Below, one piece after another: positions 3,001 through 38,650 of a DNA stretch of 64,000 bases. Source of the DNA: Macrostomum lignano (lineage: Eukaryota); contig NIVC01001378.1 of assembly GCA_002269645.1 (NCBI GenBank), forward strand, positions 124,001 to 188,000. Direction: 5' to 3'. The position numbers were made by a program, and so were the translations under genes. Numbering within the stretch: position 1 is the first letter of the stretch; every line of letters begins with the position of its first letter. The notes beneath the pieces are model-generated. The model was not told where the DNA came from and did not search any database. It saw only the letters and a list, made by a program, of their open reading frames with translations.

Positions 3001-3904
3001 GGTGGAGATCGGGAGAGCAGAGACACAAACCTTGAGTGGGACGGACTGCTATTGTGAAGTTTCAAGGATTCGAGGGCCGGATAGAGAGGCTTCGCGGGTC
3101 CTCCCGGAGTTTGCCAACCTCTGCTGTATACATCACGTTGTTTGCGCCACAATCCTCGTCATCCATCCCAGACTTAGCTACCTAAAAAGCCCCAAATTCA
3201 CCTGTCTGTACTCAGCGTGCTCCTCAGGCTGAGCGAGGGCGTCGGTAATCGGTACAACAACGCCAAGCATCAGTGCGAGCATGCAGTAGAGAGTCAGTAG
3301 CGACTGCAGCATTGACAGTCTGGTAGATCCGTCTTGATAGGAAGTGAATGCTAAATGGCTTGGTTTCCTGTAAATTTAAGCAAAAGAATAATTAATAACA
3401 ATGATAACTGATTAACTACCGTCCAATGGGCAGATGTGCAACCGACAGCTCAGCCGCAGCTATTGCGCGGCGCATCTGAAGGCTCAGTGCAAGGACTGGG
3501 AGGTTGCCACACACACCTTCAATTAACCCCAGCTAATGCTGGCACCCATTTTACAGCTGGGTGAACTGAAGCAATGCAGAGTTAAGTGTCTTGCTCATGG
3601 ACACAAATTGCTCCGGGTGGGTCGAGAATCGAACCCCCGACCTTTCAGTAGTGAGTCCGACGCTCTGACCACTGGGCTACAACAGGATAAAGTGCCTAGA
3701 AGGAGTTTATTTCATGTGGCTTTATATCAAACTGGATTTCCATTCACAACTGTCTCCGACATCTCGATAGTAGTATAATTCGTGTAGAAAAACTTGGTTC
3801 TGAAAAATTCCCGAAAATTACCTAACTCTTCTCCTCCTTTGCTGAAATTGGCCGGACTTTGATTGCTGCCAGGTGTCATTAGACTTCGGTCTTACGGAGT
3901 CCAT
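1..3904 (-). CDS. Otop: Otopetrin-family proton channel, 3'-truncated by the window edge. Exons (minus strand): 3904-3822, 3367-3202, 2855-2459, 2310-2143, 2064-1901, 1818-1527, 653-<1
   Basis: Hand-spliced with GT-AG junctions and consistent phases (2,0,1,1,0,1). Otopetrin motifs: NLYLRFGAIIFGFG, FIVLQTYFLFKH, RFFLIHLAVANLCIW, PYLYPCAVEYGLICAA, CHKSHRGLFGGL. The N-domain Q/N/Y triad and the E of the EY motif are present. The first coding exon (MDSVRPK...) is less certain. Confidence 0.9.
3490..3680 (-). mobile_element. tRNA-derived CORE-type SINE in otopetrin intron 1
   Basis: Minus strand reads TAGCCCAGTGG (A box) ... GGTTCGATTC (B box), followed by GTGTCCATGAGCAAGACACTTAACTCTGCATTGCTTCAGTTCACCCAGCTGTAAAATGGG. 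This aligns by eye to the MIR/CORE consensus GTGACCTTGGGCAAGTTACTTAACCTCTCTGTGCCTCAGTTTCCTCATCTGTAAAATGGG. Confidence 0.75.
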
Positions 3905-4339
3905 CGTTGTATGAAGAAGGCTCAGTTGGCTACAATCTGGATTGTAGACTCGAATTAAACAACAAAACCGAATAGATTTATTTATGACCAGGGCAAGTTA
4001 GAAATTTTTTCAGTCGACTTAAAAATAGAGTCCTGTGTTAGTTTGCGAACTTCGAGAGTGAATAGAAGAGAAGAATTAAGAAAGAGGTGTGCGTGTGCGC
4101 TCAAACCGGCTTCCGACGGCGCGGGGCTCATCCAGAATTCCAAGTAATTAATTACTCACGTGACTGTGTTTGCTCCAGAGCCAGTACTGGGCAGTGTTTT
4201 CTTGTGATGGAAAGAAATTTATTGTGCATTTGCTCTGTTGAGCTATAATTTATTATATTTAAAGCAATTGAAACTGAGTTTGAGTAGTAAAGTAGCAAAA
4301 CTGCTTTGTTGCCTGCTTGGCAGATCTCCGGCTCTGCAG

Positions 4340-5470
4340 CATCTATCTGCTGATCTCTATGCATCTATCTGTTGATCTCTATGCATCTATCTGCTGATCT
4401 CTATGCATCTATCTGCTGATCTCTATGCATCTATCTGCTGATCTCTATGCATCTATCTGCTGATCTCTATGCATCTATCTGCTGATCTCTATGCATCTAT
4501 CTGCTGATCTCTATGCATCTATCTGCTGATCTCTATGCATCTATATCTGCTAATCTCTATGCATCTATATCTGCTAATCTCTATGCATCTATCTGCTGAT
4601 CTCTATATGCATCTATCTGCTGATCTCTATGCATCTATCTGCTGATCTCTATGCATCTATCTGCTGATCTCTATGCATCTATCTGCTGATCTCTATGCAT
4701 CTATCTGCTGATCTCTACATGTATGCATCTATCTGCTGATCTCTATGCATCTATCTGCTGATCTCTATATGCATCTATCTGCTGATTTCTATGCATCTAT
4801 CTGCTGATTTCTATATGCATCTATCTGCTGATCTCTATGCATCTATCTGCTAATCTCTATGCATCTATCTGCTGATCTCTATATGCATCTATCTGCTGAT
4901 TTCTATGCATCTATCTGCTGATCTCTATATGCATCTATCTGCTGATTTCTATGCATCTATCTGCTGATCTCTATATGCATCTATCTGCTGATTTCTATGC
5001 ATCTATCTGCTGATCTCTATATGCATCTATCTGCTGATTTCTATATGCATCTATCTGCTGATCTATATGCATCTATCTGCTGATCTCTATGCATCTATCT
5101 GCTGATCTCTATATGCATCTATCTGCTGATTTCTATGCATCTATCTGCTGATTTCTATATGCATCTATCTGCTGATCTCTATGCATCTATCTGCTAATCT
5201 CTATGCATCTATCTGCTGATCTCTATATGCATCTATCTGCTGATTTCTATGCATCTATCTGCTGATCTCTATATGCATCTATCTGCTGATCTCTATATGC
5301 ATCTATCTGCTGATCTCTATATGCATCTATCTGCTGATTTCTATGCATCTATCTGCTGATCTCTATATGCATCTATCTGCTGATCTCTATATGCATCTAT
5401 CTGCTGATCTCTATATGCATCTATCTGCTGATCTATATGCATCTATCTGCTGATCTATATGCATCTATCT
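4340..5470. repeat. Minisatellite, 22-bp unit ATGCATCTATCTGCTGATCTCT with 24-bp variants
   Basis: Direct tandem periodicity read from the sequence. Confidence 0.97.
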
Positions 5471-6143
5471 ACAAATCTCCATGCCTCTATCTGCCGATTT
5501 CCATGCCTCTATCTGCCGATTTCCATGCATCTACCTACCCTGTCCCTACTTCGGTCTACACTGTTTTAATGCATCTAGGAACACGTATGCACACGATTTG
5601 ATTTAATTATATTTATTTGCAGAAAGCACACTAGCTGTCTCAGCTGACAGCTGTTTAGAATCAGAGGCAGCATAAACAAGTTCTAACTGAATCCGATGGT
5701 TTTAATTTTCACTGATGCTGCTTATGCCAATGCAGTTGGAAGATTCTGTAACAGACACTTATAACTAACTAATAGTTTCTACACTCTCAGTTTGCTTGTA
5801 TATCCTGTCAGCTAGCGGAAAAGCTATAGTGAAACTTCACCTCCAATAACTAGGCTCATGCGCTGAAATGCTGAACTTTAAAGCCAGCCAGATTTGTGCC
5901 CACCAAATTTCAAGCGACCACCAGAATGTAAACAGGATTCGACTGCGCCTAACTGTAATGCAAACATGAAGTCAAATGATTTTTAACACCACCCTAAAAA
6001 CTATTTAGCTTTAATGCTGTTGAATCTTATAGCTCTTAGATCAGCTAGTTAATTTTTTGTTTATATTCCACCGCAGTTTGATCTCGTTTTTGGTCGCAGC
6101 GAAAGCGAATTCCTAGTAAACTTCATCAAGCAGTCTATTAGCC

Positions 6144-7550
6144 ATGGTCAACTCAAGCGAACCTCCGGAACTGCCACCCCGTCCACCTTCAATGATGGCG
6201 GTGGAAAACTCGGACAACAACACGGTTCAACTTCGCAGACGGAGCGACGCGCTGCAGAAACGTCGTCAAGAGTCGCCGCCACCACCGGCCCTGCCGCCAA
6301 GAGACTCTTCAACTCCGGTTTCAACCATCGCTACAATCAAGAGCGAAGAGTCGATTTATAGACAAGTGGAAAGTCTCGACTGTTGGGTGAACTGCACCAG
6401 ACAGGAGGCCAACAAGCTGCTGCTTAGCGGCGACAGGCAGGGTGGAACTTACCTGCTCAGGCCCTGTCACAGCCGTCGCGAAAGGTACGCTATCAGCGTA
6501 CTAAAAGAAGTGAACTCTTCGAGGCGACGTGAAGGGGCCGACCGAGTGCGTAACTCCTCCGTGGCTGCGCTGGTGTCCCGTCTCTTCCGAGCTCGGCGAA
6601 GCGCCTCCGTGGTAGAGGGCCAGCTGACGAAGCAAGAGTCCTCTAGGGTGAAGCACTACCTGGTCAGGGAGAGCCCGGCTGGTTACTACCTGTACTCGAA
6701 CCGCCGATTCAAAACCGTAGTCGATCTGATTGCCTATTACGCTACGTCGCCTGAAAAGCGCCAACGTTCAGGCGCTCTGCTCAGGCGATCCATCGCTGCT
6801 GCTGTTGACGAACCGGGCGGCGAAGAGAAGAACAAGGCCGAGTTTGCTAAAGACAGCCGGGGAAGACGCGTACGATTGGTACGAAAAGTTGGCGAGGGCA
6901 CCTACCAGGTAAGTAGGCCATGCTTATTTTGAGGATACTGTCGTCAATTGAGCTATCAAATCACGCGATTTGCACAAGCTGCGTTATCACACAAAAGCCG
7001 GATTAATTTGATGAAGATTTGAACGTTTCTTTAGACCTTTTACGTGCAGGCCATTTACCACAGATTTTTTTGGCACAAACCTCTAATTTCGCAGAGCTGT
7101 ATTCTGCCCCTTCTTTCCTCCATGAACCTTGGAACAGTTTGAAAAGTTGGAATCCTTATTCCTGAAAAGACCCAGACACGTAGCTAGCAGTATCTGGTCA
7201 TCAACAACATTTTTGCTGATTTATTACTGTAATTTATGCAGATGTTCTTGGCCGAAGTTGGCGGTGTTCAAGTTGTTTCGTTAATTCTGGACACCGAGTC
7301 GATCAAAACCGGCGGAGGAAGCCGTTCAACAAGCGCCATAGTTCCCAGGAAGCCAAGGCTTGACGATGCACTCAAGTCAAACAAGCTGTCGAAGATGCTA
7401 CCGGTGGATTGCGAGCGAAAGTCCTGCAATCTTGGCGAAGGCGCTAACCGGAAGCGGTCAGCTCGATCGGTCATTCGCACCGGAGCTCTGCTTCTGCAAG
7501 AAGCAATTGGTCGAGTTGCCGCTAAGAGTCTTGAAAAGGACGACCGTTGA
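6144..7550 (+). CDS. Proline-rich SH2-domain protein (~357 aa) ending in a degenerate tyrosine-kinase N-lobe fragment. Exons 6144-6908 and 7242-7550
   Basis: SH2 motifs: WVNCTRQEANKLL, GTYLLRP (FLVR arginine), YAISV, VKHYLV, FKTVVDLIAYY. PxxPxR motifs PELPPRP and PALPPRD. Donor CAG|GTAAGT at 6908/6909 and acceptor TATGCAG| at 7241 join in phase 0 (VRKVGEGTYQ-MFLAEV). Confidence 0.75.
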
Positions 7551-8441
7551 GACGTATGAAAAACCCTTTGGATAAGAGCTAGAGCCGTCGAAGAAGAACT
7601 TTTTTTCGCTTATAACTTGATTAAAGGATATTTTCTATTTGGTTTTTGCCATAAAAAATGAGTACATGTATAATCTGCTCACCACGCCTGCAAAAAAACC
7701 AGTTATGTAAGCTCGTCCGCGGAAACATCAAAATAACTTGGCAAGTTTCTTTATTCATTCCGTCGGGTCGATTAAAACACGAGTTTTAATGTTTTCTGAC
7801 GATTTTGCGTGGAGAGCTTTTCTCGAATAATTTTTAAACAGCATTAGAGTTAAATAATTTGTAACATAGCTTGTTAGCTAACAAGCTCGATAATTTCTTT
7901 TTCGATGCTATTGCAAGGAAAGCTATTGTGAGTATCAAAGACATTACGGTATTTAACAGCTAACTCCTATTTATTGAGCATATCGAGGATGTCAATACTT
8001 TCAATTTACGTCTGATTAGTTTTTATCTTTAATAATACTAGCTAGTAAAACTTGCCGTTGGTTTCAAGCTTGCCAGATATTTTATTCTATTCATACTTTA
8101 TCCAGCTAAGTCTACCATCAATGCTTCAATATTGACTAGACTACAGGAATCTGAATAAAACTCGTGCGAATTGGACGTAAACTCGGTAGTTACATGTAAT
8201 TAGAGCCTTATATATGGTCAATAGTCAACCAGTAAAACAAATTCATTAATATTTTAATGATTTTATTTGTCAATAAACTGTTTACCGATTGAGCACTGCG
8301 ATTATTGATTGACTTGCGTTTCCGTCATTTAAAATTTGAGTTTTGTTCTTTAGCGAGATACTTCAATCTGTCAATCTGTCAATAGCAGATGCCGTAGCTC
8401 GTATTAAAGCTCTCAGCTTCTCCTCCTCTCTGTTGGTTCTC

Positions 8442-10397
8442 ATGCCACTTCCACACTCGACTCTGGACTACAAGGGTAGGTTGGCTGATTCCCCAGTATC
8501 AGCCAATGAAAGCTTGATGGGTTCCGATTGGCCCAAAGGGAAAATAAAATACCCGAAATCTCCTCGCCCAACGTTGAGTCAATCCCGACAGACTAAGGCC
8601 AACGCTAAACCAGTCATGGAGCACGAGAAGCAGCCGTCGCAGGCCCGCACGAGTCGCCCGGGACCGCAGTTTCTTCACAAAATTCTGGCCGGCTTCTTTG
8701 AATACAAGCTGCAAAAAGTGGTGGTGATCCGAAGCATTAAGTTTGGCTTGTTTTATCGCAGCGTCCAGCTGTCTGTGATTGTGTACTTCTTGTTCTACAT
8801 CATCTGGCACAAGAAAGGCTACCAGGCCAAGGAGACTCCAGAGGGCGGCGTTGTTTTCAAAGTGAAGGGTTTGGATTTTGTTAACAAAAGCGACGACTGG
8901 GACAACGGAGCGAGGGTCTGGGACGCTGCGGACTACATCATTCCCCCGATCATGAACGGCGCCATCTTCATCACGACTAACGCTCGCGTCACCGATCGCC
9001 AGTCGATGTCGGCTTGTCCAGAGAGGGCCGGACACTGCTACTGGGACAGCGACTGCGCCGGCGGAACCATCGGCGAATACGGGCGGCGCACGGGCAAGTG
9101 CAACAGCAGTACGCACACCTGCATGTCGTACGGCTGGTGCCCGCTGCTCATGGAGGACAATTTCCAGCTGCCAGGCCAATCTGTGCTCACCCGAGCCAGA
9201 GACTTCACCATTCTACTCAAGAACAGCGTCGACTTTCGAGCGTTCGACAAGAAGCGGCGAAACATTTTGGATTGGATGACCAGCGACTACCTGCACAACT
9301 GCCTGTACGAGCAGCAGCATCCCAACTTCACTTATTGCCCCGTGTTCCGGCTGGGCGACATTCTTCACTACGCCACAGGCGACGCCAAATCGGCCGAGGA
9401 CATCTACAGAGTTGGCGGAGCTATCGGAGTTGACATCTCCTGGATGTGCAACTTCGACTTGCCTGACGAGCGCTGCCTGCCGAAGTACCACTTCCGCGAG
9501 TTGGACACCGGGCGAGGCACCGACACGCATGGCTTCTCGGTGCAGTACGCCTACAACTACCGCAGCGAGGGCGAAGACCGCCGAATGCTGGTGCACGCCT
9601 ACGGCATCAAGATATTCGTGTCCGTGTCTGGCGAGGGCGGCCGCTTCGATTTCTACAGCCTGTCGATGAACCTGGGCAGCGGCCTGGCCCTGTTCGGCCT
9701 GTCCTCCATGCTGTGCGACATCATCCTGCTGCGCATCGCCAGCCAGAAGCAGCGGGCCAGCCTGCAGAAGGCTCGCGTCGACTACTGCGACGACGACAGC
9801 GCCAGCGTTGCGACAACCGCTGCCACATCCGGGGTGAATGCCGATTCGTCTGACGAGGCAGCTGCCGATAGCGTTGACATCTCAAAGATGACGAAACGAC
9901 GACGTAAAGAGATTCAACAGCAGCGACAGCTGGTGCAGCATCAGCAGCATCAGCAGAGGCATCATCAGCCTCGTCGTCGACCTGCTCCAACCAGCGGCCG
10001 GGGCTCTTGTCCTCGTCATCGACCCGAAGTTCGTCGCCTGTCGCCGCCGCCTCCAACGCCTCCGCCTCCACCGCTGCTGACTCCGCCGCTAACGCCGCCG
10101 GCGCCGATGTCGGCCTGGCGCCAGCCGTCGCCACCGTCGCCGCCGGAGATTGTCCGCCTGGAGTCGAGCCCGTCGACGTTTCTTCGGCCGGCCTCGAAGG
10201 CAGCCGCCGCAGCCGCGGCCGTCCAGAAGCAGGCGGTTCGTCCGAGAATTCTGCAACAGCTGAAGCTGCAACAGCAGCAGCAGCGGCAGCAACAGCAGCT
10301 GCTTCAAAGAGGAAGAAGAGAAGCTGGATATGAAAGCGACTCGGCTGCCAGCTGGCAGGCAGCGGCCGCGGACACAACGAGGGAGACCCTCATCTGA
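8442..10397 (+). CDS. P2RX-like: P2X purinoceptor-like ion channel, single exon, with a long Q/P-rich C-tail. Start at ATG 8442 or 8616
   Basis: FFEYK..KVVVIRS, TM1 LFYRSVQLSVIVYFLFYII, KKGYQ, KVKG, WDAADYIIPP, all 10 ectodomain cysteines, FTILLKNSVDF, CPVFRLGD, AYGIKI, TM2 FDFYSLSMNLGSGLALFGLSSMLCDIIL. Confidence 0.93.
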   Translation: MPLPHSTLDYKGRLADSPVSANESLMGSDWPKGKIKYPKSPRPTLSQSRQTKANAKPVMEHEKQPSQARTSRPGPQFLHKILAGFFEYKLQKVVVIRSIKFGLFYRSVQLSVIVYFLFYIIWHKKGYQAKETPEGGVVFKVKGLDFVNKSDDWDNGARVWDAADYIIPPIMNGAIFITTNARVTDRQSMSACPERAGHCYWDSDCAGGTIGEYGRRTGKCNSSTHTCMSYGWCPLLMEDNFQLPGQSVLTRARDFTILLKNSVDFRAFDKKRRNILDWMTSDYLHNCLYEQQHPNFTYCPVFRLGDILHYATGDAKSAEDIYRVGGAIGVDISWMCNFDLPDERCLPKYHFRELDTGRGTDTHGFSVQYAYNYRSEGEDRRMLVHAYGIKIFVSVSGEGGRFDFYSLSMNLGSGLALFGLSSMLCDIILLRIASQKQRASLQKARVDYCDDDSASVATTAATSGVNADSSDEAAADSVDISKMTKRRRKEIQQQRQLVQHQQHQQRHHQPRRRPAPTSGRGSCPRHRPEVRRLSPPPPTPPPPPLLTPPLTPPAPMSAWRQPSPPSPPEIVRLESSPSTFLRPASKAAAAAAAVQKQAVRPRILQQLKLQQQQQRQQQQLLQRGRREAGYESDSAASWQAAAADTTRETLI

Positions 10398-11630: not shown

Positions 11631-12164
11631 ACTTTGATCTTTGATCAGTGTATCTCTTTCGAGACGATTTGCAAGCGTGAGTCCTTCTGTTGCCACTTGA
11701 GCAGTTCGTGCCAAAGATATTGACAAAAATCGATCCCAAAGAAGGAATTCTTCTGACTGACCTGAGAAAATGCTAAAAACTGAGCGCGCTCCAGTGGCAA
11801 CAAACTTTCTTTCATTCATTTTTCTTCTTTTTCAAATTCAGCTGAGCACAAGAACTGGCCCTCATGCCAGAGGCCGTGTTTGCAGGACAAAGGCGCGGCG
11901 CAAAAGCTGAACAAACTTCAAATATCCGCAGCTCCAACCCATGGGCTCTCCCAGTTGCTAGCACGATCATGCTCAGCTCCGCTCCCAGCAACATTGGCGC
12001 GGCACGCACGTACAAGTGTGGGAAGGCAGACTGCTGCTTGCACCTGCCAATTTGCCCCTTGGCACTTGAGCAAATTGCCTGCACTTGTTAAGAATTACCA
12101 TTTTCTATTGGCAAATTGCTTTCAACTAGAGAAATATGAGCTATCTGTATGCATGAATGCATAT

Positions 12165-12585
12165 ATCTTGTCTGTCTGTCTGCCTGTCTATCCTTCTGTC
12201 TGTCTGTCTGTCTGTCTGTCTGCCTGTCTATCCTTCTGTCTGTCTGTCTGTCTGTCCGTCTGTCTGTATATCCTTCTGTCTGTCTGTCTGTCTGCCTGTC
12301 TATCTTTCTGTCTGTCTGTCTGTCTGTCTATCTTTCTGTCTGTCTGTCTGGCTGTCTGTCTGCCTGTCTCTATCTTTCTGTCTGTCTGTCTGTCTGGCTG
12401 TCTGTCTGCCTGTCTCTATCTTTCTGTCTGTCTGTCTGCCTGTCTATCTTTCTGTCTGTCTGTCTGTATGTCTGTCTGTCTGTCTGTCTGTCTGTCTGCC
12501 TGTCTTTCTGTCTGTCTACATGTGTGTCTATCTATCCATCCATCCATCTATCTATCTATCTATCTATCTACCTATCTATCTATCT
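12165..12585. repeat. (TCTG)n microsatellite grading into (TCTA/TCCA)n
   Basis: Directly visible. Produces the spurious SVCL ORFs. Confidence 0.97.
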
Positions 12586-13134
12586 GTCAACACACGGAAT
12601 CAATCATAATCCACCCACTTTTTGTCAACACTGCAATTAGAGAATTAGCAATTATGTCTGCAGTGTTTTATCAGAAAGTAAAAAAAGAATTCACGTCAAG
12701 CAGAGCCAATTATAAAATAAGCGCTGGACCGCACAACCAGACATTGCTTATCCCTGCTCCCAATCATTGTCCATCGGAAAAACGATTGCTCAAAAATCAT
12801 ACGAGCAAGAGCTCCCCTACCGCATGGCAGCGCTCTGCATAATCAATGAATTTGGCATATTGTTGACCGATTAAACAGGGTGGTTCCTTGCTCAAATGTT
12901 CCTGTTTTAATCCCGTGCAGGGGGACATTTTATGCGTCCATTGATGGATTGATTGACCGATTCACCTGTATGCAGCCAATTTATGCCAAACAATTTACAC
13001 AAACTGGAGTGTGCAATGATGGCAACAGGACTGCAAATTAAATCCAGCTGAATTAACAACTTACTAAACAAAATGCTGGTAATCTGTTGATTGCAAAGAT
13101 GCTGAGGACTTTGCTTGCTGATGCTTGAGAAATG

Positions 13135-14975
13135 AAAAGACACTAAGATCAGGAATGCAAAGACACTAAGATTAGGAATGCAAAGACACTAAGATCAGGA
13201 ATGCAAAGACACTAAGATCAGGAATGAAAAGACACTAAGATCAGGAATGCAAAGACACTAAGATCAGGAATGCAAAGACACTAAGATCAGGAATGCAAAG
13301 ACACTAAGATCAGGAATGAAAAGACACTAAGATCAGGAATGCAAAGACACTAAGATCAGGAATGCAAAGACACTAAGATCAGGAATGCAGACACTAAGAT
13401 CAGGAATGCAAAGACACTAAGATCAGGAATGCAAAGACACTAAGATCAGGAATGCAAAGACACTAAGATCAGGAATGCAAAGACACTAAGATCAGGAATG
13501 AAAAGACACTAAGATCAGGAATGCAAAGACACTAAGATCAGGAATGCAAAGACACTAAGATCAGGAATGAAGACACTAAGATCAGGAATGAAAAGACACT
13601 AAGATCAGGAATGCAAAGACACTAAGATCAGGAATGCAAAGACACTAAGATCAGGAATGCAAAGACACTAAGATCAGGAATGCAAAGACACTAAGATCAG
13701 GAATGCAAAGACACTAAGATCAGGAATGAAGACACTAAGATCAGGAATGCAAAGACACTAAGATTAGGAATGCAAAGACACTAAGATCAGGAATGCAAAG
13801 ACACTAAGATCAGGAATGCAGAGACTAAGATCAGGAATGCAAAGACACTAAGATCAGGAATGAAGACACTAAGATCAGGAATGCAAAGACACTAAGATCA
13901 GGAATGAAAAGACACTAAGATCAGGAATGCAAAGACACTAAGATCAGGAATGAAAAGACACTAAGATCAGGAATGCAGACACTAAGATCAGGAATGCAAA
14001 GACACTAAGATCAGGAATGAAAAGACACTAAGATCAGGAATGCAAAGACACTAAGATCAGGAATGCAGACACTAAGATCAGGAATGAAAAGACACTAAGT
14101 TCAGGAATGCAAAGACACTAAGATCAGGAATGCAAAGACACTAAGATCAGGAATGCAAAGACACTAAGATCAGGAATGCAGACACTAAGATCAGGAATGC
14201 AGACACTAAGATCAGGAATGCAAAGACACTAAGATTAGGAATGCAAAGACACTAAGATTAGGAATGCAAAGACACTAAGATCAGGAATGCAAAGACACTA
14301 AGATCAGGAATGCAAAGCCACTAAGATCAGGAATGCAAAGACACTAAGATCAGGAATGCAAAGACACTAAGATCAGGAATGCAAAGACACTAAGATCAGG
14401 AATGCAAAGACACTAAGATCAGGAATGCAGACACTAAGATCAGGAATGCAAAGACACTAAGATCAGGAATGCAAAGACACTAAGATCAGGAATGCAAAGA
14501 CACTAAGATCAGGAATGCAAAGACACTAAGATCAGGAATGAAAAGACACTAAGATCAGGAATGCAAAGACACTAAGATCAGGAATGCAAAGCCACTAAGA
14601 TCAGGAATGCAAAGACACTAAGATCAGGAATGCAAAGACACTAAGATCAGGAATGCAAAGACACTAAGATCAGGAATGAAGACACTAAGATCAGGAATGC
14701 AAAGACACTAAGATTAGGAATGCAAAGACACTAAGATCAGGAATGCAAAGACACTAAGATCAGGAATGCAGAGACTAAGATCAGGAATGCAAAGACACTA
14801 AGATCAGGAATGCAGAGACTAAGATCAGGAATGCAAAGACACTAAGATCAGGAATGCAGAGACTAAGATCAGGAATGCAAAGACACTAAGATCAGGAATG
14901 AAGACACTAAGATTAGGAATGCAAAGACACTAAGATCAGGAATGCAAAGACACTAAGATCAGGAATGCAAAGACA
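13135..14975. repeat. Satellite array, 23-bp unit GACACTAAGATCAGGAATGCAAA, about 80 copies
   Basis: Directly visible, with small indel and substitution variants. Confidence 0.98.
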
Positions 14976-15609
14976 CGGACAAGCCTGGAAACGCGTGAAA
15001 TTCTAAAAGCGAACTACTGCGTTAATCAGTGACTGACTAATTCTAATCACGTAATCCTCTTGCCTAATCCGACAGCAAAGTCGGATAAACACGCAGTCGA
15101 ATTAACAATAATAAATTAAACCCCATCTGAAATCTCCATTAAGCATTGCAGAAGCCGCCAGCAACACAGCAAACCACGGAAAGATCAAGCTGCATTGACG
15201 TCAGCAATTCAGCAAGGCCGCACTATAAATGCTCGAAGTGCTGTAAATAAGCGCTTATGATAAGGCCTGAATCTGAAATCCAGCTTGGCACACAGTCTTA
15301 ACCTGATAGCGCATATTGCTTTGAGAATTGCATAGCGTTGCATTGGCAAATATACCCAGCTTTGAAAGGCATGGGATGTCCCGATGGGGCACTTAGTGAA
15401 TTTATTATAGTCATGGAATTTTTATAGCTCTTTTTTAGGTCATCGCGAAATACTAACGGCCAATAGGCTAAATGTTTCAAAATATGTCTGACTAGACAAG
15501 ATAACAAAAATTTATTCATTATTCGGTGTGGCTGGCGGCCCGAACTTGCTTTATAATACTTGGAGACAGCGTAAAAAAGTAATTATATGATAGGCTCCGA
15601 TACAAAAAT

Positions 15610-15777
15610 ACAGACAGACAGACAGACCGACAGACACAGACAGACAGACAGACAGACACACAGGCAGACAGACAGTCAGACAGGCGGGCATACAGACAGA
15701 CAGACAGACAGACCGACAGACACAGACAGACAGACAGACAGACACACAGGCAGACAGACAGTCAGACAGGCGGGCAT

Positions 15778-15820
<43 letters not shown>

Positions 15821-16665
15821 CCAAGACAGACAGACAGACGGACAAACAGACAGGCAGACACACAGACAGACAGGCAGACAGACAGACAGACAGACACACA
15901 GACAGACAGACAGACAGAGAGACAAGTCAGACAGACAGACAAGTCAGACAGACAGACAGACAGGCAGACAGACAGACAGACAGACAGGCAGACAGACAGT
16001 CAGACAGACAGGCAGTCAGGCAGACAGACAGACAGTCAGGCAGACAGACAGACAGGCAGGCAGACAAACATTCAGGCAGATAGACAGACAGGCAGACAGT
16101 CAGACAGACAGACAGACAGTCAGGCAGACAGACAGGCAGGCAGGCAGACAGTCAGTCAGGCAGACAGACAGACAGTCAGGCAGACAGACAGACAGTCAGG
16201 CAGACAGACAGGCAGACAGTCAGACAGACAGACAGTCAGTCAGACAGACAGGCAGACAGACAGGCAGACAGTCAGGCAGACAGACAGACAGGCAGACAGA
16301 CAGACAGACAGGCAGACAGACAGGCAGACAGGCAGACAGACAGGCAGACAGTCAGACAGACAGTCAGTCAGGCAGACAGACAGACAGTCAGACAGTCAGA
16401 CAGACAGACAGGCAGACAGTCAGACAGACAGACAGTCAGTCAGACAGACAGGCAGACAGACAGGCAGACAGTCAGGCAGACAGACAGACAGGCAGACAGA
16501 CAGACAGACAGGCAGACAGACAGGCAGACAGGCAGACAGACAGACAGGCAGACAGTCAGGCAGACAGACAGACAGACAGACAGGCAGACAGACAGACAGA
16601 CAGGCAGACAAGCAGACAGACAGGCAGACAGACAGACAGACAGACAGACAGAAAGGCAGACAGGC
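15610..16665. repeat. (GACA/GGCA)n microsatellite
   Basis: Directly visible. Produces the spurious DRQT ORF. Confidence 0.98.
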
Positions 16666-17149
16666 ACAAGCATATCCCTAGAAACCCACCATCAGCCCCT
16701 TACCACAGTTACAAGAAATCAAGCCAACAAAAATCCTACTAAAAACTGCAGCAACATTTCGTGTCCACAAAACTGACGAGCAACATATAAAATGCCCAAA
16801 CTGGGATTATATTTAATGCCACAGCAGTGCAACTCGCGGTGCTCAACTGCAGTACCAAATGCGTTGGCCGAGTTAGAAAATGACAATTCTTAAACTTTAA
16901 ATTCTTGGCCAACTTTAACAAATCTTTAGCCAAAAAGAAGACAACGCACAATGGGCACAGCGGGAAGGAAGGAAGATGAAATCAACAGGAAAGTAGGACA
17001 ATGATAAATCAGAGACAATTACACATCACTTGCTAAGCATTTGCATCAGTGAACCACATTAATAAATGGAAATCGAAAAAAAACTTCTCAACTCATGCCT
17101 TAATTGTACTCTGTTTGAAATCTGAATTCGAATTTGAATATAATTTAAA

Positions 17150-17547: not shown

Positions 17548-20500
17548 CTATTTCTTAGAAGCAGCCAGACCGCCACGTCGGGCCAATTTAAACTTGGCAA
17601 TCTTGGCCTTGGCCGCTTCAGCTTTCTTTTGCTGTTTGCGGCGTTTCCGTCTAGCGAACACTTCCGGTTGAGTGACGGCGGCGGCAGCCAGCGATCCGGC
17701 ACGGTCGGACCGGGCAGCAGCTCGCGACCTGGTCAGCTGGGCCAGCGCCGAGGCCACGGCGGACTCTCCGACGCCCCGTCGCAGTGTGTCCAACAGCGAG
17801 TGCGCCAGATCGGTCACTTCTGGCGAAGCATTTCGCTGTCGAAGTTCGCGCGCCGCCACGGCCAGGCACCGGCGAAGACAGCCGGACGATTCCAAAGCGT
17901 CACCGCCCAGCACGGAGGCCACCCCGGCGCACACCTTCAAGGCTAGGCAGCGGCGAAGCGTTGACGGCTTCAAATGCTGCAATTCGTAGCGCGACTCTCG
18001 GCCAACTCTGAGCAGAATCCATTCGGTTGAGAAGCCTTTATCTGCGCCGGTTAAACCGGCTGTTGCTGGACTCGCGTCACTACCCAGTTCTAGCTGGTGA
18101 ACCCGACAGCACAGGTGAACAAGTGCGCGAGCCACATCGTCTGACCAGGCCTCATCCAGGTGAGGCGATTTTAACTGATCAAAAAATGCCAAGGCCAGAG
18201 TGCGACAGTGAGACATGGCTGAGTCTGTGTCAGTCATTGCCGGCTGGGACTGCTCAGCCAGTCTGTTAGCAACCAACTGCAGACAGCGACGCCGAACCCA
18301 AGCGAACCGATGATTCAGCAGGCTCTCTAACAATGACCAGATGTCTGTGTGTACCTGCTGCAGCTGCAGCGCATTGGGACATCTGGCTAACAAGTCAACA
18401 CAACGGAACAGAGCATGATCGATTGCTTCGTTTACCACGTCAGTCTCTTGAGCTTGTTTCAGGCTTTTAGGCTTTTGCTCGTGTTCGGCTGTACTCAAAG
18501 ATGCATCAGCTAGTTGCTTCAACAGTTCAGCTAAGCAGGTGTGCAATTCAACTGTGGACCAGTTCTCTTCATCGCCGCTCTCTGTTTCAACTTCTCTGTA
18601 CTCAAAAAACGACAAAGCCGCAGTCAGACCCAGGCGTTGTTGAACAACCCGTTGCGACAACTGTTTAACATCCGTGCGCATCAGACGCAAAGCTGAGGCA
18701 AACAATTCTCTGCGCTGATCTGCGCCGCATCTGCGCAACAGGCCGTGCAAGCAGTCGGTTAGCCGGGCTCTCAGCTGATCATTGCATTCCGAGTCTGCGG
18801 CTACTAACAGTTTGAGGAACAGCACCCTGGCCAGATCGCCATTCACCAGCCAGTCAGCTGAGATGCAGTGGATCAGGGAGGCCAGCATCTGCACAGCCGA
18901 GCTCCTACCATCCACGCCATCGTAATCCAACTGAACTAAGAAGAAGTCCAAATAGCGTCGTACAGTTTTAGCTGGCAGTTGATAATCTCTTAGATAGATT
19001 AACAGACAGTCGCGCGACTGACTGCGAACATAGTCTAGCGCAGATGTGACCACTAGACGACGCAAGGAGTCCATGATAGAGGACAGACTGGCGTGATCTT
19101 TCTCAGTTTCAACGTCTAATTCGTGTCTCAGCTGCGGCTTAGGGTTGAGGCGTTTAGCTAGCAAAGCTCGGAGCAAAGGAAAAGCGTGACTGGCCCTGTG
19201 CGGACTGTCCACATCCAGAGCGATGTAGTCTACTATGGTGACCAGATCCGGCTGCGACAGCGCGTCGTGTCTAATAAGAACGGCTAAAGTTTTATGCAGC
19301 AACTGTTGCAATTGAGACGGCTGCTGCAACTGTTGCCTAGTTGACCAGTGCAAGCTTTGCTCGTTAAACAGAGCCAGAACGCGCTTAGCAATCGGCCGGT
19401 AAGCGTTGCTGGATTGGCCTTGGCCTTTATCGAGATCAGCAGCAGCTGTAGCCGCCAACTGATGCAGGGGAACCAGACGGCTGAGACACTGCAGAGCCGC
19501 CGTGAGCACAGCTGTGTGTTGCGAATCCAACGAGCTCAACAGAATCGGCACAAACGGATCCAGCATCCGACGCGATATCGGGGAGCAGTTTTTATTCTTG
19601 CCGCTCTCTGAGTCGCTTTTTGATGAAGCATTTCTGAGCACAGCGTAGAGCAATCTCAGGCCGAATCTTAGCAGCACTTGATAGCTGCCGAGCTGCGCGG
19701 GTCGCGTCTCGGATCTGGCAGGCTCCGGGTCCAGTAGTCGACAGTCCGGGCCGCGAATGCCGACACTTCGATGCTCAGCCGCGGGTTCGATTCCTGATGC
19801 TACTAACAATTTATCTTTCGAATTATTATCGCCATTCTGTTCGTCGCCTGCTCGACGACAGAGCAGGTGAGCGGCGGTTAGCAACTGTTCGTCTGTTAAT
19901 CCGCTGTTGCCAGGCAACGAGTCGGCTCGTTCCAGCTGACCGCAGAGTCGTTCGAGTTTTTTAAGCGCGGCTAAGCTGCGCACAGCGGAGCACTGATTGG
20001 CCAGAATGTTGGTGAGCTGGGCCAGGCCGGTTGGGCCCACCATGGAGCCAAGGCGGTGCATCACGCTATAGGCGTGAGTGCGCTGCGCCTCAGGCAGCTT
20101 GCGGGTGAGCGCTTCCACCTGCGAGGGGGGGTGGGGTGGCGTAGATATCTAGAGACTATTTGTACTTTGATCTGACTCTCTAGGCTAAGATTAAGAACAA
20201 TATGTTGATTAAGTGGATTTCAGATCTACGAATTAAGACTAAGATCCCTCGTAGATAGGGAGTGATGGGATATGGAAGTTTTGATCTATAGATAGTGTGT
20301 GATGGGATTTAAGATTTGTGATTTATAGATAGGGAGTGGTTCTTGATTTATAGACAGGGAGTGGTTCTTGATTTATAGATAGGGAGTGGTTCTTGATCTA
20401 TAGATAGGGAGTGGTTCTTAATCTATAGATAGGAAGTGATGGGATTTTGTGATCTATAGATAGGGAGTGGTTCTCGATCTTTAGATAGGAAGTGGAATTT

Positions 20501-23500
20501 TGTGATCTATAGATAGGGAATGATTGGATCTGGGATTTGTGATCTATAGATAGGGAATGATTGGATCTGGAATTTGTGATCTATAGATAGGGAATGATTG
20601 GATCTGGGATTTGTGATCTGTAGATAGGGAATGATTGGATCTGGGATTTGTGATCTATAGATAGGGAATGATTGGATCTGGAATTTGTGATCTATAGATA
20701 GGGAATGATTGGATCTGGGATTTGTGATCTATAGATAGGGAATGATTGGATCTGGGATTTGTGATCTATAGATAGGGAATGATTGGATCTGGGATTTGTG
20801 ATCTATAGATAGGAGTGAACTCAATTTGGCAGTTTTGATTTATAGATAGGGAGTGATGGGATTTGGCAGTTTTGATCTATAGATAGGGAGTGTGATGGGA
20901 TTTGGCAGTTTTGATCTAGATAGGGAGTGATTGGACTTAATTTATGAATTAATATACGAGTAATTAGGGAGACGGAATTTGGGATTTTTTATTTAGATAG
21001 GGAATAATTGGAATGAATTTATGACCTAATTAGGATAATCCGGGATTTCGGGTATCTAGATTAGGAGATGGGAACTCAGAATTCAAACAAGAGTGAACTT
21101 TAAATCTCAAGTGATAACTAAAAACGGAAGTACAACATCGCAATAGAATCAATTCTAGACCTCTTTCTCCTTGGACAAGTCGCCCAACAATTCGTCCATG
21201 TAGATGCGGCACAGCCGATCCAGGGTCTCGCCATCCAGACAGCCGGTAGGCATGCCAGCAGCCTGGCAGTGACGCAACAGAGAGTGCAGCGTGTGCGCCA
21301 ACACGTGCCGAGTGTATCCTCTAGCCAATAGCAGGCTCAATTCCCTGGCAACAAAGCCTAGATAGTCGTTGCCTAGCAACTGTACAACTCGTACTAAAGT
21401 TGCACCGGCCTCTTTGCGTACGGCGTGTTCCCGACTGCGAAGGAACTCCGCTAGCCGATAGACCAGCTTAGGCAGGCGTTGGTCTCGCAGCCGGCGGGGT
21501 AGCTTAGCTAATAATTGAGCGAGGGCCACGGCCACGGATACTTGAAGCACCTGGGGCTCCTGTCGCGGCGCCAACCGGTGCTGCTGCTCAGCGGCGGTCT
21601 TGTCTCTGGACAGGTGGCGCTCCAATCGGGGACAGACGAATTCTATTAGAAAAGTCAACGGCCCGCTGCCTCCCATTGATCTAGTGGCGCTATTTGACGC
21701 TTCTGGTTCTTCGTTAGTTACTTCCGGTTCGCCATTAGTCACTTCCGGTTCGCCTTTAGTCACTTCCAGTTTTCTATTAGTCATTTCCGGTTCGCCTTTA
21801 GTCACTTCCGGTTCGCCTATAGTCACTTCCGGTTCGCCTTTAGTCACTTCCGGTTTGCCATTAGTCACTTCCGATTTGCTATTAGTCACTTCCGGTCTGC
21901 CATTATTCACTTCCGGTGACAATTTTTTCGCTCGTTTAACCGTTGCAAAAATGTTACTAACCGGAACCGATTGCTGGAAGAAACGCAATCGTCGCTTCCG
22001 ATTGCCAGATTGCTTGCTAGCCGCTTCCGGTTCGATTTCTAATTGATCATCCTCGTCTACTTCTCCGATTTCTCCCAGACCGGACAGGGCGGCAACGGCC
22101 AGCCGCACTGGCAGCTTGGATTCCGTAGCCGGCCCGTCCAAGCCTTTCAGGCAGAGTTTGAGCAGCTGCTGCAGCATCGGCCAAGACAGACGGGAGCTGA
22201 TGGAGGCCAGCAGCTCTAAAGAGGATTCTATTAAGCTGCGTCTGTTAGAAGCTTGCTGCTGCTGCTGCTGTTTCCCTGCTGAAGCAGACCGGCCGCTCTT
22301 GTGCAAATAGTGCATAGGCAGCGGCAGCAGGTAGTGATACAGCAGATTAGCAGGGATGCAATCCCCTCTAGGGCTGGCTAGATAGGTGATCAGCTGGCGG
22401 AATCCTTTCACGATTCGAGCCGACTAGAGAGAAGGTTAAATTGAGACAGGTGAGACCATACACAGGATAGTCCATACTATACAGACTAAACAATCATGTA
22501 GATAAACATTTACTCACATTGACGCTGCGAACATTGTCGAAAAATGAGTCGTTGACTGAGGCAGATGTCGAACTGCCGGCGCTTGCATCTGCAGATGCCT
22601 GCTGCTGCTGCTGCTGCTGCTGCTGGGCCGACGGCAGGAGACCCGCTAATCCTTGCAGGCGAGCATGGCGACCGAATTCGGTAACAATTTTGCCTAGTAG
22701 GCCGATGTATTCCACGCGACGGTTCTGTTGCCAGGCAGGGTTTTGGGAGCATGGGAGAAATTAGAGAAATTCATTTTATACAGTTTGGGATCCAGAGCTA
22801 CACTGTTATGGGAGATTCTAGAATGGGGGGGGGAAGAATGGGGATCTAGAGCTAGACTGTTATGAGATATTCTAGAATGGATGGGAAGAATGGGGATCTA
22901 GAGCTAGACTGTTATGAGATATTCTAGAATGGATGGGAAGAATGGGGATCTAGAGCTAGACTGTTATGAGAAATTCTACAATGGATGGGAAGAATGGGGA
23001 TCTAGAGCTAGACTGTTATGAGATATTCTAGAATGGATGGGAAGAATGGGGATCTAGAGCTAGACTGTTATGAGATATTCTAGAATGGATGGGAAGAATG
23101 GGGATCTAGAGCTAGACTGTTATGAGATATTCTAGAATGGATGGGAAGAATGGGGGTCTAGAGCTAGACTGTTATGAGAAATTCTACAATGGATGGGAAG
23201 AATGGGGATCTAGAGCTAGACTGTTATGAGATATTCTAGAATGGATGGGAAGAATGGGGATCTAGAGCTAGACTGTTATGAGATATTCTAGAATGGATGG
23301 GAAGAATGGGGATCTAGAGCTAGACTGTTATGAGAAATTCTACAATGGATGGGAAGAATGGGGATCTAGAGCTAGACTGTTATGAGATATTCTAGAATGG
23401 ATGGGAAGAATGGGGATCTAGAGCTAGACTGTTATGAGATATTCTAGAATGGATGGGAAGAATGGGGATCTAGAGCTAGACTGTTATGAGATATTCTAGA

Positions 23501-36319: not shown

Positions 36320-36594
36320 TTACTGGGTTAACTGGTCAGTGCTGGAATGGCCAATAAGAGATTGCTACAAATTGTCTGAATGAGCCTTCGTTTTTAATAA
36401 GTTAGCCACTATACTATATTATATAAAATAGAAACACAATAGAAGAAAACATCCTAAAAAATTCTTGTAAATTCATAAACTTAGCTACTATTTTCTAATG
36501 GCCTATAACTTATAAAAAATAATTTAGACAAGCTATAAAAGAAGCAATAATATGTAAAACTGTCTATTTTTAGAAACAAAAATCAAGGCTACTG

Positions 36595-37431
36595 CAGTGT
36601 TGGGCATGATACTTTAAAAAAGTATTGTTTTAAAGCGATACTCCAATACCAATACTCTAAAAGGCATTGGCGATATTTGTTGGTCCCATACCAAAATTTG
36701 AGTATCGTGCAATACTTTATTCCAATACTTGGTCCGATACATCATTTTTTTGCATTTTCTCACTTTTCTGCATCTATCAAGCCAAAAATGAAGAAAAAGC
36801 TCTTAGCTACTTAATTTTTAGACACTAAAGACTTTAGTGAGACGTGGCTGATCAGAGAAGAAGATTAAATGGGCAAAATATTGTTATAAATTTTCATTAT
36901 ATTTATATTAGCATTTGCACCTACATAGTACATTAAGATGAAAAGACTACATGATAGATGATACAAAAATAATAATGCGCATGATATGTAAAAACTCCAA
37001 CTCATTGATTAGAAATTGGATGTTACTTGACTTTCACTAAATTAAATTTATGAACAATTTAACAGGAACCTACTCGCTTAATAGCTAATATCATTTCAGA
37101 ATTCAATTCAGAGCAGCTCGAGTGGGATATGCTGGTTGCCCCGGAGAAGTACCAGCCTCATGAGGGTCAAATTGGCCAGTGGAGTGCGCTTTGCATGGAG
37201 AACATCCTTTCTATACTTCCTGTTACTTTTTTTAATACTTTTTAAGCTTTTTAGTCAAATTTATTACTATTAGTTTGATTAAATGTATCAGATTATTGAA
37301 CTTAAGAAAATGTATTGGCAATACCAAGGTCCAATACTGAGAAAAAAGTAACAAGGTCCAATACTCTTATACTCAAATGGTATTGGCAATACTATTGGAG
37401 TATTGGAGTATTGGACCTGTGCTTAACACTG
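36595..37431. mobile_element. Non-autonomous hAT-like DNA transposon (MITE) just upstream of UTP20
   Basis: TIRs CAGTGTTGGGCA and TGCTTAACACTG (10/12 match). Flanks GGCTACTG and GGCTTCTA (6/8, degenerate 8-bp TSD). Subterminal CCAATAC/GTATTGG repeats at both ends. Confidence 0.7.
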
Positions 37432-38259: not shown

Positions 38260-38650
38260 TGTCAAAATCCTTTTTGTCAAATAGTCATTTTGCCATTTTG
38301 TCAAATAGTGGGAAATAGATGCATATGATTTTAAATTTAGGTTAAAGTTACATGTTAAAAATTAAAGTGCAAAGTAAGTGCAAAAAGCAGAATTGAGTAT
38401 TTATGAATACTTATCATGGTTCCCTTTAGTAATTAGAGTAATTAGTAATTAGTTTTTTAGAAACACTTCACTTTAAATAAGAAGTATACTTCTTTCTAAT
38501 ACTGACTTATTTTTTATCAAGTCATCAAATTATAAGCAACTTATCTAGAGTAGAGTATTTACTTTAATTTGAATTGGAAATTATGCACACATCTCTTTTT
38601 AATAGGACTAGGCCTATTTGACAAAATGATCAAATGACTATTTATTGAAA
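38260..38650. mobile_element. Possible degenerate foldback/MITE remnant
   Basis: CATTTTGTCAAATAG (~38296) and CTATTTGACAAAATG (~38615) form an inverted pair. No TSD identified. Confidence 0.3.

What the first reader, a model, noticed from the sequence alone, without database searches (positions are those of the whole stretch)
8859..9596. P2X-like channel lacking half of the canonical ATP-binding site
Seen: the first-subunit residues are intact (KVKG at 8859-8867; T in FTILLKN). The NFR motif is replaced by SVQ (GFSVQYAYNY, 9537-9545), and the lysine of RTLxKAYGI is replaced by His (RMLVHAYGI, 9594-9596). All 10 cysteines and the TM2 G/D residues remain. Known: N288, R290 and K308 (rat P2X2 numbering) coordinate ATP phosphates, and mutating them strongly lowers ATP potency. 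Inference: a structurally intact channel gated by another ligand, protons or metal, or a modulatory heteromer subunit. Caveat: Dictyostelium P2X receptors also diverge here and still respond to ATP.
Basis: partly seen in the sequence, partly recalled or inferred. Interest (0 to 1): 0.8.

Follow-up and report, generated by a model that had tools for sequence, protein, structure and literature searches.

The report
Flatworm P2X subunit, degenerate ATP site
An intact, evolutionarily conserved flatworm (Macrostomum-type) gene encodes a P2X ion-channel subunit that keeps one face of the ATP pocket and has replaced the whole opposite face, so it probably cannot be opened by ATP in the usual way on its own.

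Summary
Window 8616-10397 (+) is one uninterrupted 593-codon ORF. It encodes a P2X-family subunit (Pfam E=6e-98; AF2 pLDDT 89.5; TM-score 0.83-0.91 to solved P2X structures). K82/K84, T198 and K202 are kept. N-F-R is S308-V309-Q310 and the K308(rP2X2) equivalent is H327.

Of 62 positions at least 80% conserved in 138 other P2X representatives, the protein departs at only six. Four of these are the complete NFR/K face (P=0.0017). The others are the T of the N-terminal YxTxK motif and the Glu of WCPxE, the partner of R290. The C-terminal YxxxK motif is also lost.

It is not a pseudogene. Macrostomum lignano has a transcribed counterpart (79% identity) with the same SVQ/H, and dN/dS is 0.20. A second M. 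lignano paralog has VVE/R. Parasitic flatworms carry another degenerate P2X-like clade, also under purifying selection.

Function is untested. My best guess (0.4) is a heteromeric partner of canonical P2X subunits that supplies its intact face and disables one of three ATP sites. The rivals are a homomer gated by something else, or a weakly ATP-gated homomer. This is a new variant of a known kind, of moderate interest.

The parts
8616..10397 (+). Complete single-exon CDS of the P2X-like subunit (593 aa plus stop). The ORF stays open upstream to 8343, with in-frame ATGs near 8443 and 8517, so the true start is uncertain.
   Evidence: homology to M. lignano begins at about residue 18
8697..9755 (+). 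P2X_receptor domain (residues 28-380)
   Evidence: Pfam PF00864 E=5.8e-98; AF2 pLDDT 89.5; Foldseek TM 0.83-0.91 to P2X4/P2X1
8703..8717 (+). YKLQK: the N-terminal YxTxK/R motif with the conserved Thr replaced by Leu32
   Evidence: T in 81% of other P2X, L in 0%; L in all three Macrostomum-clade proteins
8736..8810 (+). TM1 helix (residues 41-65)
   Evidence: AF2 model helix H41-65
8859..8870 (+). K82-V-K84-G: retained KxKG phosphate-binding motif (zfP2X4 K70/K72)
9135..9149 (+). WCPLL: the canonical WCPxE Glu (rP2X2 E167, partner of R290) is Leu178. A Glu lies two residues later but is not conserved in the M. lignano proteins.
   Evidence: E in 93% of other P2X; alignment ambiguity seen; E167/R290 salt bridge from PMC4460280
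9204..9224 (+). FTILLKN: retained T198, L200 and K202 (zfP2X4 T189, L191, K193)
9285..9347 (+). Dorsal-fin segment retaining L226 (zfP2X4 L217, ribose contact) and V243 (I232, adenine contact)
   Evidence: alignment to zfP2X4 8jv5; residue roles from PMC3874471
9537..9545 (+). S308-V309-Q310 in place of the NFR motif (zfP2X4 N296-F297-R298)
9594..9596 (+). H327 in place of the conserved Lys (rP2X2 K308 / zfP2X4 K316)
   Evidence: K in 95% of other P2X
9651..9737 (+). TM2 pore helix with NLGSGLAL and D368 conserved
   Evidence: AF2 helix H346-374; invariant G354, G356, D368
9762..9776 (+). LQKAR in place of the YxxxK surface-stabilisation motif
   Evidence: Y in 67% of others versus L/L/Q in the clade; alignment; motif role cited in PMC3853471
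9801..10379 (+). Long low-complexity cytoplasmic tail (Pro-rich and poly-Q), unalignable with the M. lignano tail
   Evidence: tail dN/dS about 0.56 on an unreliable alignment
10380..10397 (+). C-terminal RETLI plus stop: identical last five residues in the M. lignano counterpart. It fits a class I PDZ-ligand pattern (S/T-x-hydrophobic), which is an inference.

Best explanation
What it is (shown): a full-length, selectively maintained gene for a pore-forming P2X-family subunit from a macrostomid flatworm. TM1, TM2, the ten disulfide cysteines and the whole fold are canonical. One face of the inter-subunit ATP pocket is kept: K82, K84, T198, L200, K202, L226 and V243. The opposite face is entirely replaced: N-F-R to S-V-Q, and K to H.

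How it most likely works (inferred): a homotrimer would have three crippled sites and should be insensitive to micromolar ATP. The subunit is therefore most likely a partner of the canonical P2X subunits that Macrostomum also encodes. In a heterotrimer with two canonical subunits and one divergent subunit, its intact KxK/T..K face would complete one normal ATP site with a canonical neighbour. Its SVQ/H face would disable one site. That leaves two working sites, which published work shows are enough to gate P2X channels.

The lost YxTxK and YxxxK motifs, and the long tail that ends in the conserved RETLI, would then tune desensitisation, trafficking and anchoring of the complex.
For: Identity and integrity:
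- Pfam E=6e-98, PDB P2X4 E=6e-75, AF2 pLDDT 89.5 / pTM 0.80, Foldseek top hits all P2X.

Selective replacement of one face:
- 6 departures among 62 conserved positions, 4 of them the NFR/K face and 0 of 4 on the KxK/T..K face.

Selection:
- The M. lignano Mlig019017 g1-g3 proteins carry the same SVQ/H.
- dN/dS is 0.20 at dS 0.74 over 372 codons.
- The block GFSVQYAYNYRSEG.DRRMLVHAYGIKIFV is 85-95% identical.
- The M. lignano GenBank gene models derive only from RNA-seq transcripts (PMC5730564).

Canonical partners exist:
- M. lignano Mlig018619 and A0A1I8H227 keep NFR/K.

Mechanistic precedent:
- Single or double mutations of these residues cost 60- to 1400-fold in potency or abolish function (PMC3874471).
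- The lysine faces belong to different subunits, and two ATP molecules suffice for gating.
- Wild-type P2X6 rescues binding-site-dead P2X2, and P2X6 itself needs partners (PMC3866589; PMC4460280).
- TM2, which drives assembly, is nearly identical to canonical Macrostomum TM2.
Against: - There are no functional, co-expression or co-assembly data.
- No natural P2X heteromer with a dead face is known.
- S, Q and H are still polar hydrogen-bond donors, so weak ATP binding in a homomer is possible. Dictyostelium dP2XE lacks both lysines yet is ATP-gated.
- The second M. lignano paralog (A0A1I8ISC6) appears to lack the KVKG strand altogether. If real, the clade does not need that face. The gene model is poor, however, and its DNA could not be retrieved.
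- Only three clade sequences are available.
- Whether a canonical P2X exists in the window's own genome is unknown, because only 64 kb was seen and the one P2X hit in it is this gene.
Confidence: 0.4

Rival explanations
1. Neofunctionalised homotrimeric channel. The remodelled pocket (K82, K84 and K202 facing S308, Q310 and H327) binds a different agonist. This could be an adenine nucleotide or nucleoside with fewer phosphate contacts, or the channel could be gated or strongly modulated by protons or metal ions through His327.
For: - The substituted residues are conserved between the two counterparts under dN/dS 0.20, so they are not decaying.
- The adenine and ribose contacts (T198, L200, L226, V243) are retained, while the beta/gamma-phosphate contacts N296, R298 and K316 are lost.
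- The pore and fold are intact.
- The R290 partner Glu is lost in step with R290.
- K-to-H recurs independently in schistosomatid P2X-like proteins.
Against: - No P2X family member with a non-ATP agonist is known.
- His327 is Arg, and Q310 is Glu, in the second M. lignano paralog, so no single new chemistry is conserved across the clade.
- Nothing was tested functionally.
Confidence: 0.25
2. Homotrimeric channel that is still ATP-gated but at low potency (high micromolar to millimolar). It would use the retained lysines plus polar S/Q/H, possibly in a compartment or niche with high ATP or low pH.
For: - Dictyostelium dP2XB and dP2XE lack one or both key lysines yet respond to ATP with EC50 100-500 uM.
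- K309R in hP2X1 costs only 25-fold.
- S, Q and H can donate hydrogen bonds.
- Loss of YxxxK hints at non-canonical (intracellular?) residence.
Against: - In animal P2X receptors, double mutants within NFR abolish responses, and K308A or K299A are non-functional.
- Here four residues are changed at once.
- F297, which shapes the site, is also lost.
Confidence: 0.25
3. Non-functional relic: a processed pseudogene, or an assembly- or trafficking-dead protein with no channel role.
For: - The CDS is intronless while the canonical M. lignano paralog has 7 coding exons.
- Three hallmark motifs are lost.
- The gene sits among dense minisatellites.
Against: - The 593-codon ORF has no stop or frameshift.
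- dN/dS is 0.20.
- All ten Cys, three N-glycosylation sequons and the pore motifs are kept.
- The terminal RETLI is conserved.
- The M. lignano counterpart is transcribed.
- Intronless CDSs are also found in canonical trematode P2X genes.
Confidence: 0.05

Closest known systems
Macrostomum lignano hypothetical proteins BOX15_Mlig019017 g1-g3 (PAA81535.1, PAA61171.1, PAA82904.1)
   Same: 79% identity. Same single-exon CDS, same S-V-Q and H, same L in YxTxK, same LQKAR and the same terminal RETLI.
   Different: The cytoplasmic tail is otherwise unalignable and the flanks are not syntenic. These proteins are unnamed and uncharacterised.
Macrostomum lignano A0A1I8ISC6 ('ATP receptor', UniProt)
   Same: 58% identity. 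It groups with the window protein at 100% bootstrap and lacks NFR/K, T18 and YxxxK.
   Different: It has V-V-E and Arg instead of S-V-Q and His. The model lacks the KVKG strand and carries a spurious 250-aa N-terminal extension. The DNA was not retrievable.
Schistosoma mansoni SchP2X and other canonical flatworm P2X
   Same: The closest functionally characterised relative (about 41% identity). Same fold and cysteines, and a long C-terminal tail. The trematode canonical gene examined here (Opisthorchis viverrini T265_00386) also has a single-exon CDS.
   Different: SchP2X keeps KxKG, NFR, K, YxTxK and YxxxK, and is gated by ATP with EC50 22 uM (PMC3853471).
Vertebrate P2X4 (solved structures 9bqh, 4dw1)
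   Same: Best sequence and structure match: 36-39% identity, TM-score 0.83-0.89.
   Different: P2X4 has the full ATP site and the E/R salt-bridge pair.
Mammalian P2X6
   Same: A subunit that works only with partners. The P2X2/6 complex is 2:1 and tolerates one defective site (PMC3866589). This is a functional analogy for the favoured mechanism.
   Different: P2X6 retains all ATP-binding residues. Its defect is in folding and trafficking, and it is not closely related.
Dictyostelium dP2XB / dP2XE
   Same: Natural P2X proteins that lack key ATP-site lysines.
   Different: They lack the other lysine face or both faces, have no conserved cysteines, are intracellular, and are still ATP-gated.
Neodermatan divergent P2X-like clade (e.g. 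Opisthorchis felineus TGZ71468.1, Fasciola TPP63337.1, Trichobilharzia CAH8840334.1)
   Same: Flatworm P2X paralogs with degenerate NFR/K (S-Q-Q..Q, I-Q-E..T, S-M-R..H) and T18 replaced by a hydrophobic residue. They have single-exon CDSs, and dN/dS is 0.21.
   Different: They have large head and left-flipper insertions, and K72 is often lost too. Common origin with the Macrostomum clade is unresolved (bootstrap 41%).

Membership tests
P2X receptor family (PF00864), structural membership | Profile HMM match above the curated threshold | tested here: met
   328.7 bits against a cut-off of 27, covering profile positions 1-353 of 361
P2X receptor family (PF00864), structural membership | Two transmembrane helices flanking a large ectodomain with the 'dolphin' fold | tested here: met
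   AF2 helices 41-65 and 346-374, pLDDT 89.5; Foldseek TM-score 0.83-0.91 to P2X1/P2X4
P2X receptor family (PF00864), structural membership | Ten conserved ectodomain cysteines | tested here: met
   C134, 141, 147, 162, 169, 175, 229, 241, 278, 287
P2X receptor family (PF00864), structural membership | TM2 pore motif (NxGSGLAL ... D) | tested here: met
   G354, G356 and D368 invariant in alignment A1
P2X receptor family (PF00864), structural membership | Trimeric assembly | not testable with these tools
   Only monomer prediction was available
ATP-gated P2X channel (functional class) | KxKG lysines (zfP2X4 K70/K72) | tested here: met
   K82-V-K84-G85
ATP-gated P2X channel (functional class) | FT..K segment (T189, K193) | tested here: met
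   F197-T198-I-L-L-K202
ATP-gated P2X channel (functional class) | NFR motif (N296, F297, R298) | tested here: not met
   S308-V309-Q310; N, F and R are present in 90%, 82% and 93% of other P2X
ATP-gated P2X channel (functional class) | Lysine before AYGI (K316 / rP2X2 K308) | tested here: not met
   H327; K in 95% of other P2X
ATP-gated P2X channel (functional class) | N-terminal YxTxK/R and C-terminal YxxxK motifs | tested here: not met
   YKLQK (T to L) and LQKAR (Y to L, K to R)
ATP-gated P2X channel (functional class) | ATP-evoked cation current | not testable with these tools
   Needs electrophysiology
Heteromer-dependent P2X subunit (P2X6-like behaviour) | Canonical P2X paralogs present in the same organism | tested here: inconclusive
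   True for M. lignano (Mlig018619, A0A1I8H227). The window's own genome is not available beyond 64 kb, and the window holds no second P2X gene.
Heteromer-dependent P2X subunit (P2X6-like behaviour) | No functional homomer; function restored with a partner | not testable with these tools
   Needs co-expression experiments
Processed pseudogene | Disrupted ORF or neutral evolution (dN/dS about 1) | tested here: not met
   Intact 593-codon ORF; dN/dS 0.20

The most novel reading that the evidence does not exclude
The Macrostomum SVQ/H clade, possibly together with the neodermatan degenerate clade, consists of 'orphan' P2X channels. They would be homotrimeric, pore-competent receptors whose remodelled pocket has switched agonist, for example to another purine derivative or to a proton- or metal-dependent ligand. 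That would be the first P2X-family members not gated by ATP.
Probability: 0.22. Interest if true: 0.85.

Novelty: new variant of a known kind. Interest (0 to 1): 0.5.

Why it matters
P2X receptors are treated as a family defined by ATP gating, and natural members that have discarded the ATP-phosphate cradle yet stay under purifying selection have not been described. No paper turned up in five literature searches.

A clade that keeps one face of the inter-subunit pocket and rewrites the other is a natural experiment on three questions. How many sites does a trimer need? Are P2X heteromers built from 'principal-only' subunits, as in Cys-loop receptors? Can the fold accept other agonists?

M. lignano is transgenic and RNAi-tractable, so the question can be tested directly. 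A second degenerate clade in flukes and tapeworms makes the point relevant to parasite neurobiology.

Tried and rejected
1. Retrogene origin specific to the divergent clade. The single-exon CDS contrasts with the 7-exon canonical Mlig018619. However, the one canonical trematode P2X gene checked is also single-exon, as are three trematode degenerate genes. Intron loss therefore does not mark the loss of the ATP site, and I dropped it as an argument.

2. Synteny with M. lignano. The flanks of L001 and the window do not align apart from repeats and one 300-bp 81% match, and the neighbouring genes differ. It cannot be settled whether the two genes are orthologs in different species or old paralogs.

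3. More clade members. An exhaustive HMMER search of 1.84 billion representatives gave only the two M. lignano clusters above 45% identity. A profile search of the 5.8 billion set added none.

4. DNA for A0A1I8ISC6, to check the missing KVKG strand, was not on record.

5. Species identification through neighbours. The UTP20 ORF search returned nothing. Exact look-ups of the P2X and SH2 products were not on record.

6. Monophyly of the Macrostomum and neodermatan degenerate clades. NJ bootstrap was only 41%, so this is unresolved.

7. Rfam and tRNA scans of the window found nothing.

8. Literature searches for Macrostomum or flatworm P2X with a degenerate ATP site, and for Mlig019017, found nothing relevant.
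Full report
**Observation.** Window 8616-10397 (+) is one uninterrupted ORF of 593 codons. K-V-K is at 8859-8867, with G at 8868-8870. FTILLKN is at 9204-9224, S-V-Q at 9537-9545 and His at 9594-9596. The protein matches Pfam P2X_receptor over essentially the whole profile (E=5.8e-98). It matches 34 distinct solved P2X chains, the best being human P2X4 9bqh at E=5.8e-75. In that residue-by-residue alignment, GFSVQYAYNYR lies on GYNFRFAKYYR and RRMLVHAYGI lies on QRTLIKAYGI. So SVQ replaces NFR, and H327 replaces the lysine known as K308 in rat P2X2 and K316 in zebrafish P2X4. The ten ectodomain cysteines, three N-glycosylation sequons, the NLGSGLAL pore motif and D368 are all present. An AlphaFold2 model built on 148 homologs is confident (pLDDT 89.5, pTM 0.80). 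It superposes on solved P2X1, P2X4, P2X3, P2X2 and P2X7 structures with target-normalised TM-scores up to 0.91.

**Is the pattern more than chance?** I aligned the protein with the 147 best representatives from an exhaustive HMMER scan of 1.84 billion cluster representatives. Leaving out the flatworm degenerate sequences, 62 positions are at least 80% conserved. The window protein differs at only six:
- T32L, the Thr of the N-terminal YxTxK/R motif
- E178L, the Glu of WCPxE
- N308S
- F309V
- R310Q
- K327H

Four of the six fall in the eight conserved ATP-site positions (Fisher P=0.0017). All four are on the NFR/K face, while K82, K84, T198 and K202 on the other face are untouched. The adenine and ribose contacts of that other face are also kept: L200, L226 and V243, equivalent to zfP2X4 L191, L217 and I232.

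The Glu of WCPxE is rP2X2 E167. The numbering follows from C164 being the sixth cysteine. E167 forms an inter-subunit salt bridge with R290 of NFR in the closed state (PMC4460280). Its loss together with R290 is coherent. The local alignment is ambiguous, however. The window has a Glu two residues later, but this Glu is not conserved in the M. lignano proteins. Outside the 80% set, the post-TM2 YxxxK surface-stabilisation motif reads LQKAR.

**Relatives.**
- The closest proteins are three near-identical Macrostomum lignano 'hypothetical proteins' (Mlig019017 g1-g3, 79% identity).
  - They share S-V-Q, His, L32 and LQKAR. Their cytoplasmic tail is otherwise unalignable, yet they share the last five residues, RETLI. 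This ending fits a class I PDZ-ligand pattern, which is my inference.
  - The M. lignano gene is also a single exon.
  - Over 372 aligned codons of the P2X domain, dS=0.74, dN=0.15 and dN/dS=0.20. The segment carrying the substitutions is among the most conserved, at 85-95% identity.
  - The GenBank gene models of M. lignano come exclusively from RNA-seq-derived transcripts (PMC5730564), so the counterpart is transcribed. Together these points dispose of the pseudogene option.
- A second M. lignano protein (A0A1I8ISC6, 58% identity) joins the clade with 100% bootstrap.
  - It has V-V-E and Arg at the same positions.
  - Its model also lacks the KVKG strand, but the model is poor and I could not retrieve the DNA.
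- M. lignano additionally has canonical P2X genes with NFR/K (Mlig018619, A0A1I8H227).
- The source organism of the window is not identified. The exact products are not on record and the flanks do not align with M. lignano. It is probably a congener, or else the gene is an old paralog.

**Wider context.** Scoring the ATP-site residues across the 148 representatives exposed another group with degenerate sites. The motifs are given as N296-F297-R298..K316 equivalents: Fasciola I-Q-E..T and C-M-N..K, Opisthorchis/Clonorchis S-Q-Q..Q, Trichobilharzia S-M-R..H, Schistosoma margrebowiei S-L-R..H, and Dibothriocephalus F-I-R..K. All of them have Met in place of the YxTxK Thr and carry large insertions. 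This neodermatan clade has 99% bootstrap support. Its union with the Macrostomum clade has only 41%, so common origin is open. The Opisthorchis felineus and Clonorchis sinensis genes give dN/dS=0.21. Degenerate-site P2X paralogs are therefore maintained by selection in at least two flatworm lineages. I first took the single-exon structure as a sign of retroposition, because the canonical Mlig018619 has 7 coding exons. However, the three trematode degenerate genes I looked up and the one canonical trematode gene are all single-exon too, so I dropped that argument.

**Mechanism.**
- Published mutagenesis gives the following losses in ATP potency for hP2X1: N290A 60-fold, F291A 160-fold, R292A 90-120-fold, K309A 1400-fold and K309R 25-fold. 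K308A in rP2X2 and K299A in P2X3 are non-functional, and double mutants inside NFR are unresponsive (PMC3874471). With all four positions changed, a homotrimer should not respond to micromolar ATP.
- The two faces belong to adjacent subunits. Two occupied sites suffice for gating. Wild-type P2X6 rescues binding-site-dead P2X2 in 2:1 heteromers (PMC3866589; PMC4460280).
- The protein is only about 40% identical to canonical relatives, yet it has kept every residue of one face and none of the other. The most economical reading is that it pairs with canonical subunits, giving its good face to one site and silencing another. I put this at 0.4.
- The alternatives are a homomer with a new agonist or proton/metal dependence (0.25), a low-potency ATP-gated homomer in the manner of Dictyostelium dP2XE (PMC2787382; 0.25), and a non-functional relic (0.05).
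- Everything about gating is inference. Shown here are the gene's integrity, its fold, the selective substitution pattern and purifying selection.

**Novelty and score.** The family is well known, but the variant is not. It is a conserved animal P2X clade with one face of the ATP site rewritten, and it has a possible counterpart in parasitic flatworms. I found no description of it in five literature searches. I rate it a new variant of a known kind with interest 0.5. It is a clean, testable lead in a tractable model, but no functional evidence is available yet.

Noticed in passing
L003 1001-2803, L004 1001-2803, L005 501-2423, L006 501-2471 (Opisthorchis, Clonorchis, Fasciola, Trichobilharzia): Flukes and tapeworms carry a separate P2X-like clade with degenerate NFR/K residues, Met instead of the YxTxK Thr, and large head and left-flipper insertions. 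They have single-exon CDSs, and dN/dS is 0.21 between O. felineus and C. sinensis. Its relation to the Macrostomum clade is unresolved (bootstrap 41%).
   Followed up: partly
L007 501-2183 versus L002 3001-9368: The one canonical trematode P2X gene examined (O. viverrini T265_00386) is single-exon, whereas canonical M. lignano Mlig018619 has 7 coding exons. One flatworm P2X lineage may descend from an ancient intron-less copy.
   Followed up: partly
window 4339-5533, 13131-14976, 22787-23528, 29537-31952, 58753-59993 and about 25 further arrays: The window is packed with long minisatellites (20-52-bp units, up to 82 copies, 85-96% matches). Several lie inside the introns of the UTP20 gene. They cause the extreme GC and AT skews seen in the composition profile.
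   Followed up: no
window 12169-12517 and 15610-16663: (TGTC)n and (ACAG)n microsatellites generate long spurious ORFs (11880-12842, 15587-16681) rich in Cys, Leu, Ser and Val.
   Followed up: no
window 6144-6932 (+); about 17548-35594 (-); about 43778-48039 (-): The neighbouring genes are a single-ORF SH2-domain protein, a multi-exon UTP20 (small-subunit processome) gene, and a Strabismus/Van Gogh-like planar-polarity gene. None matches the neighbours of the M. lignano counterpart (ribosomal L26, mitochondrial carrier).
   Followed up: partly
window 36001-43000 and 50001-58000: Two AT-rich blocks (GC 0.27-0.35) contrast with about 0.45-0.53 elsewhere. Their content was not examined.
   Followed up: no
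window 3392-3679 (-) versus L001 13550-13853: A 300-bp stretch is 81% identical to DNA 1.6 kb downstream of the M. lignano counterpart, in the opposite orientation. It has no convincing ORF. It could be a shared repeat or a conserved non-coding element.
   Followed up: no
P0181 (M. lignano Mlig019017 g2): One of the three M. lignano copies has a tail that departs from the other two after residue about 390 and ends early (467 aa). This looks like a frameshift in that copy or in its assembly.
   Followed up: no
window 8343-8615: The reading frame stays open for 91 codons upstream of ATG 8616, with two further in-frame ATGs. The real N-terminus, and any trans-splice site, is undetermined.
   Followed up: no
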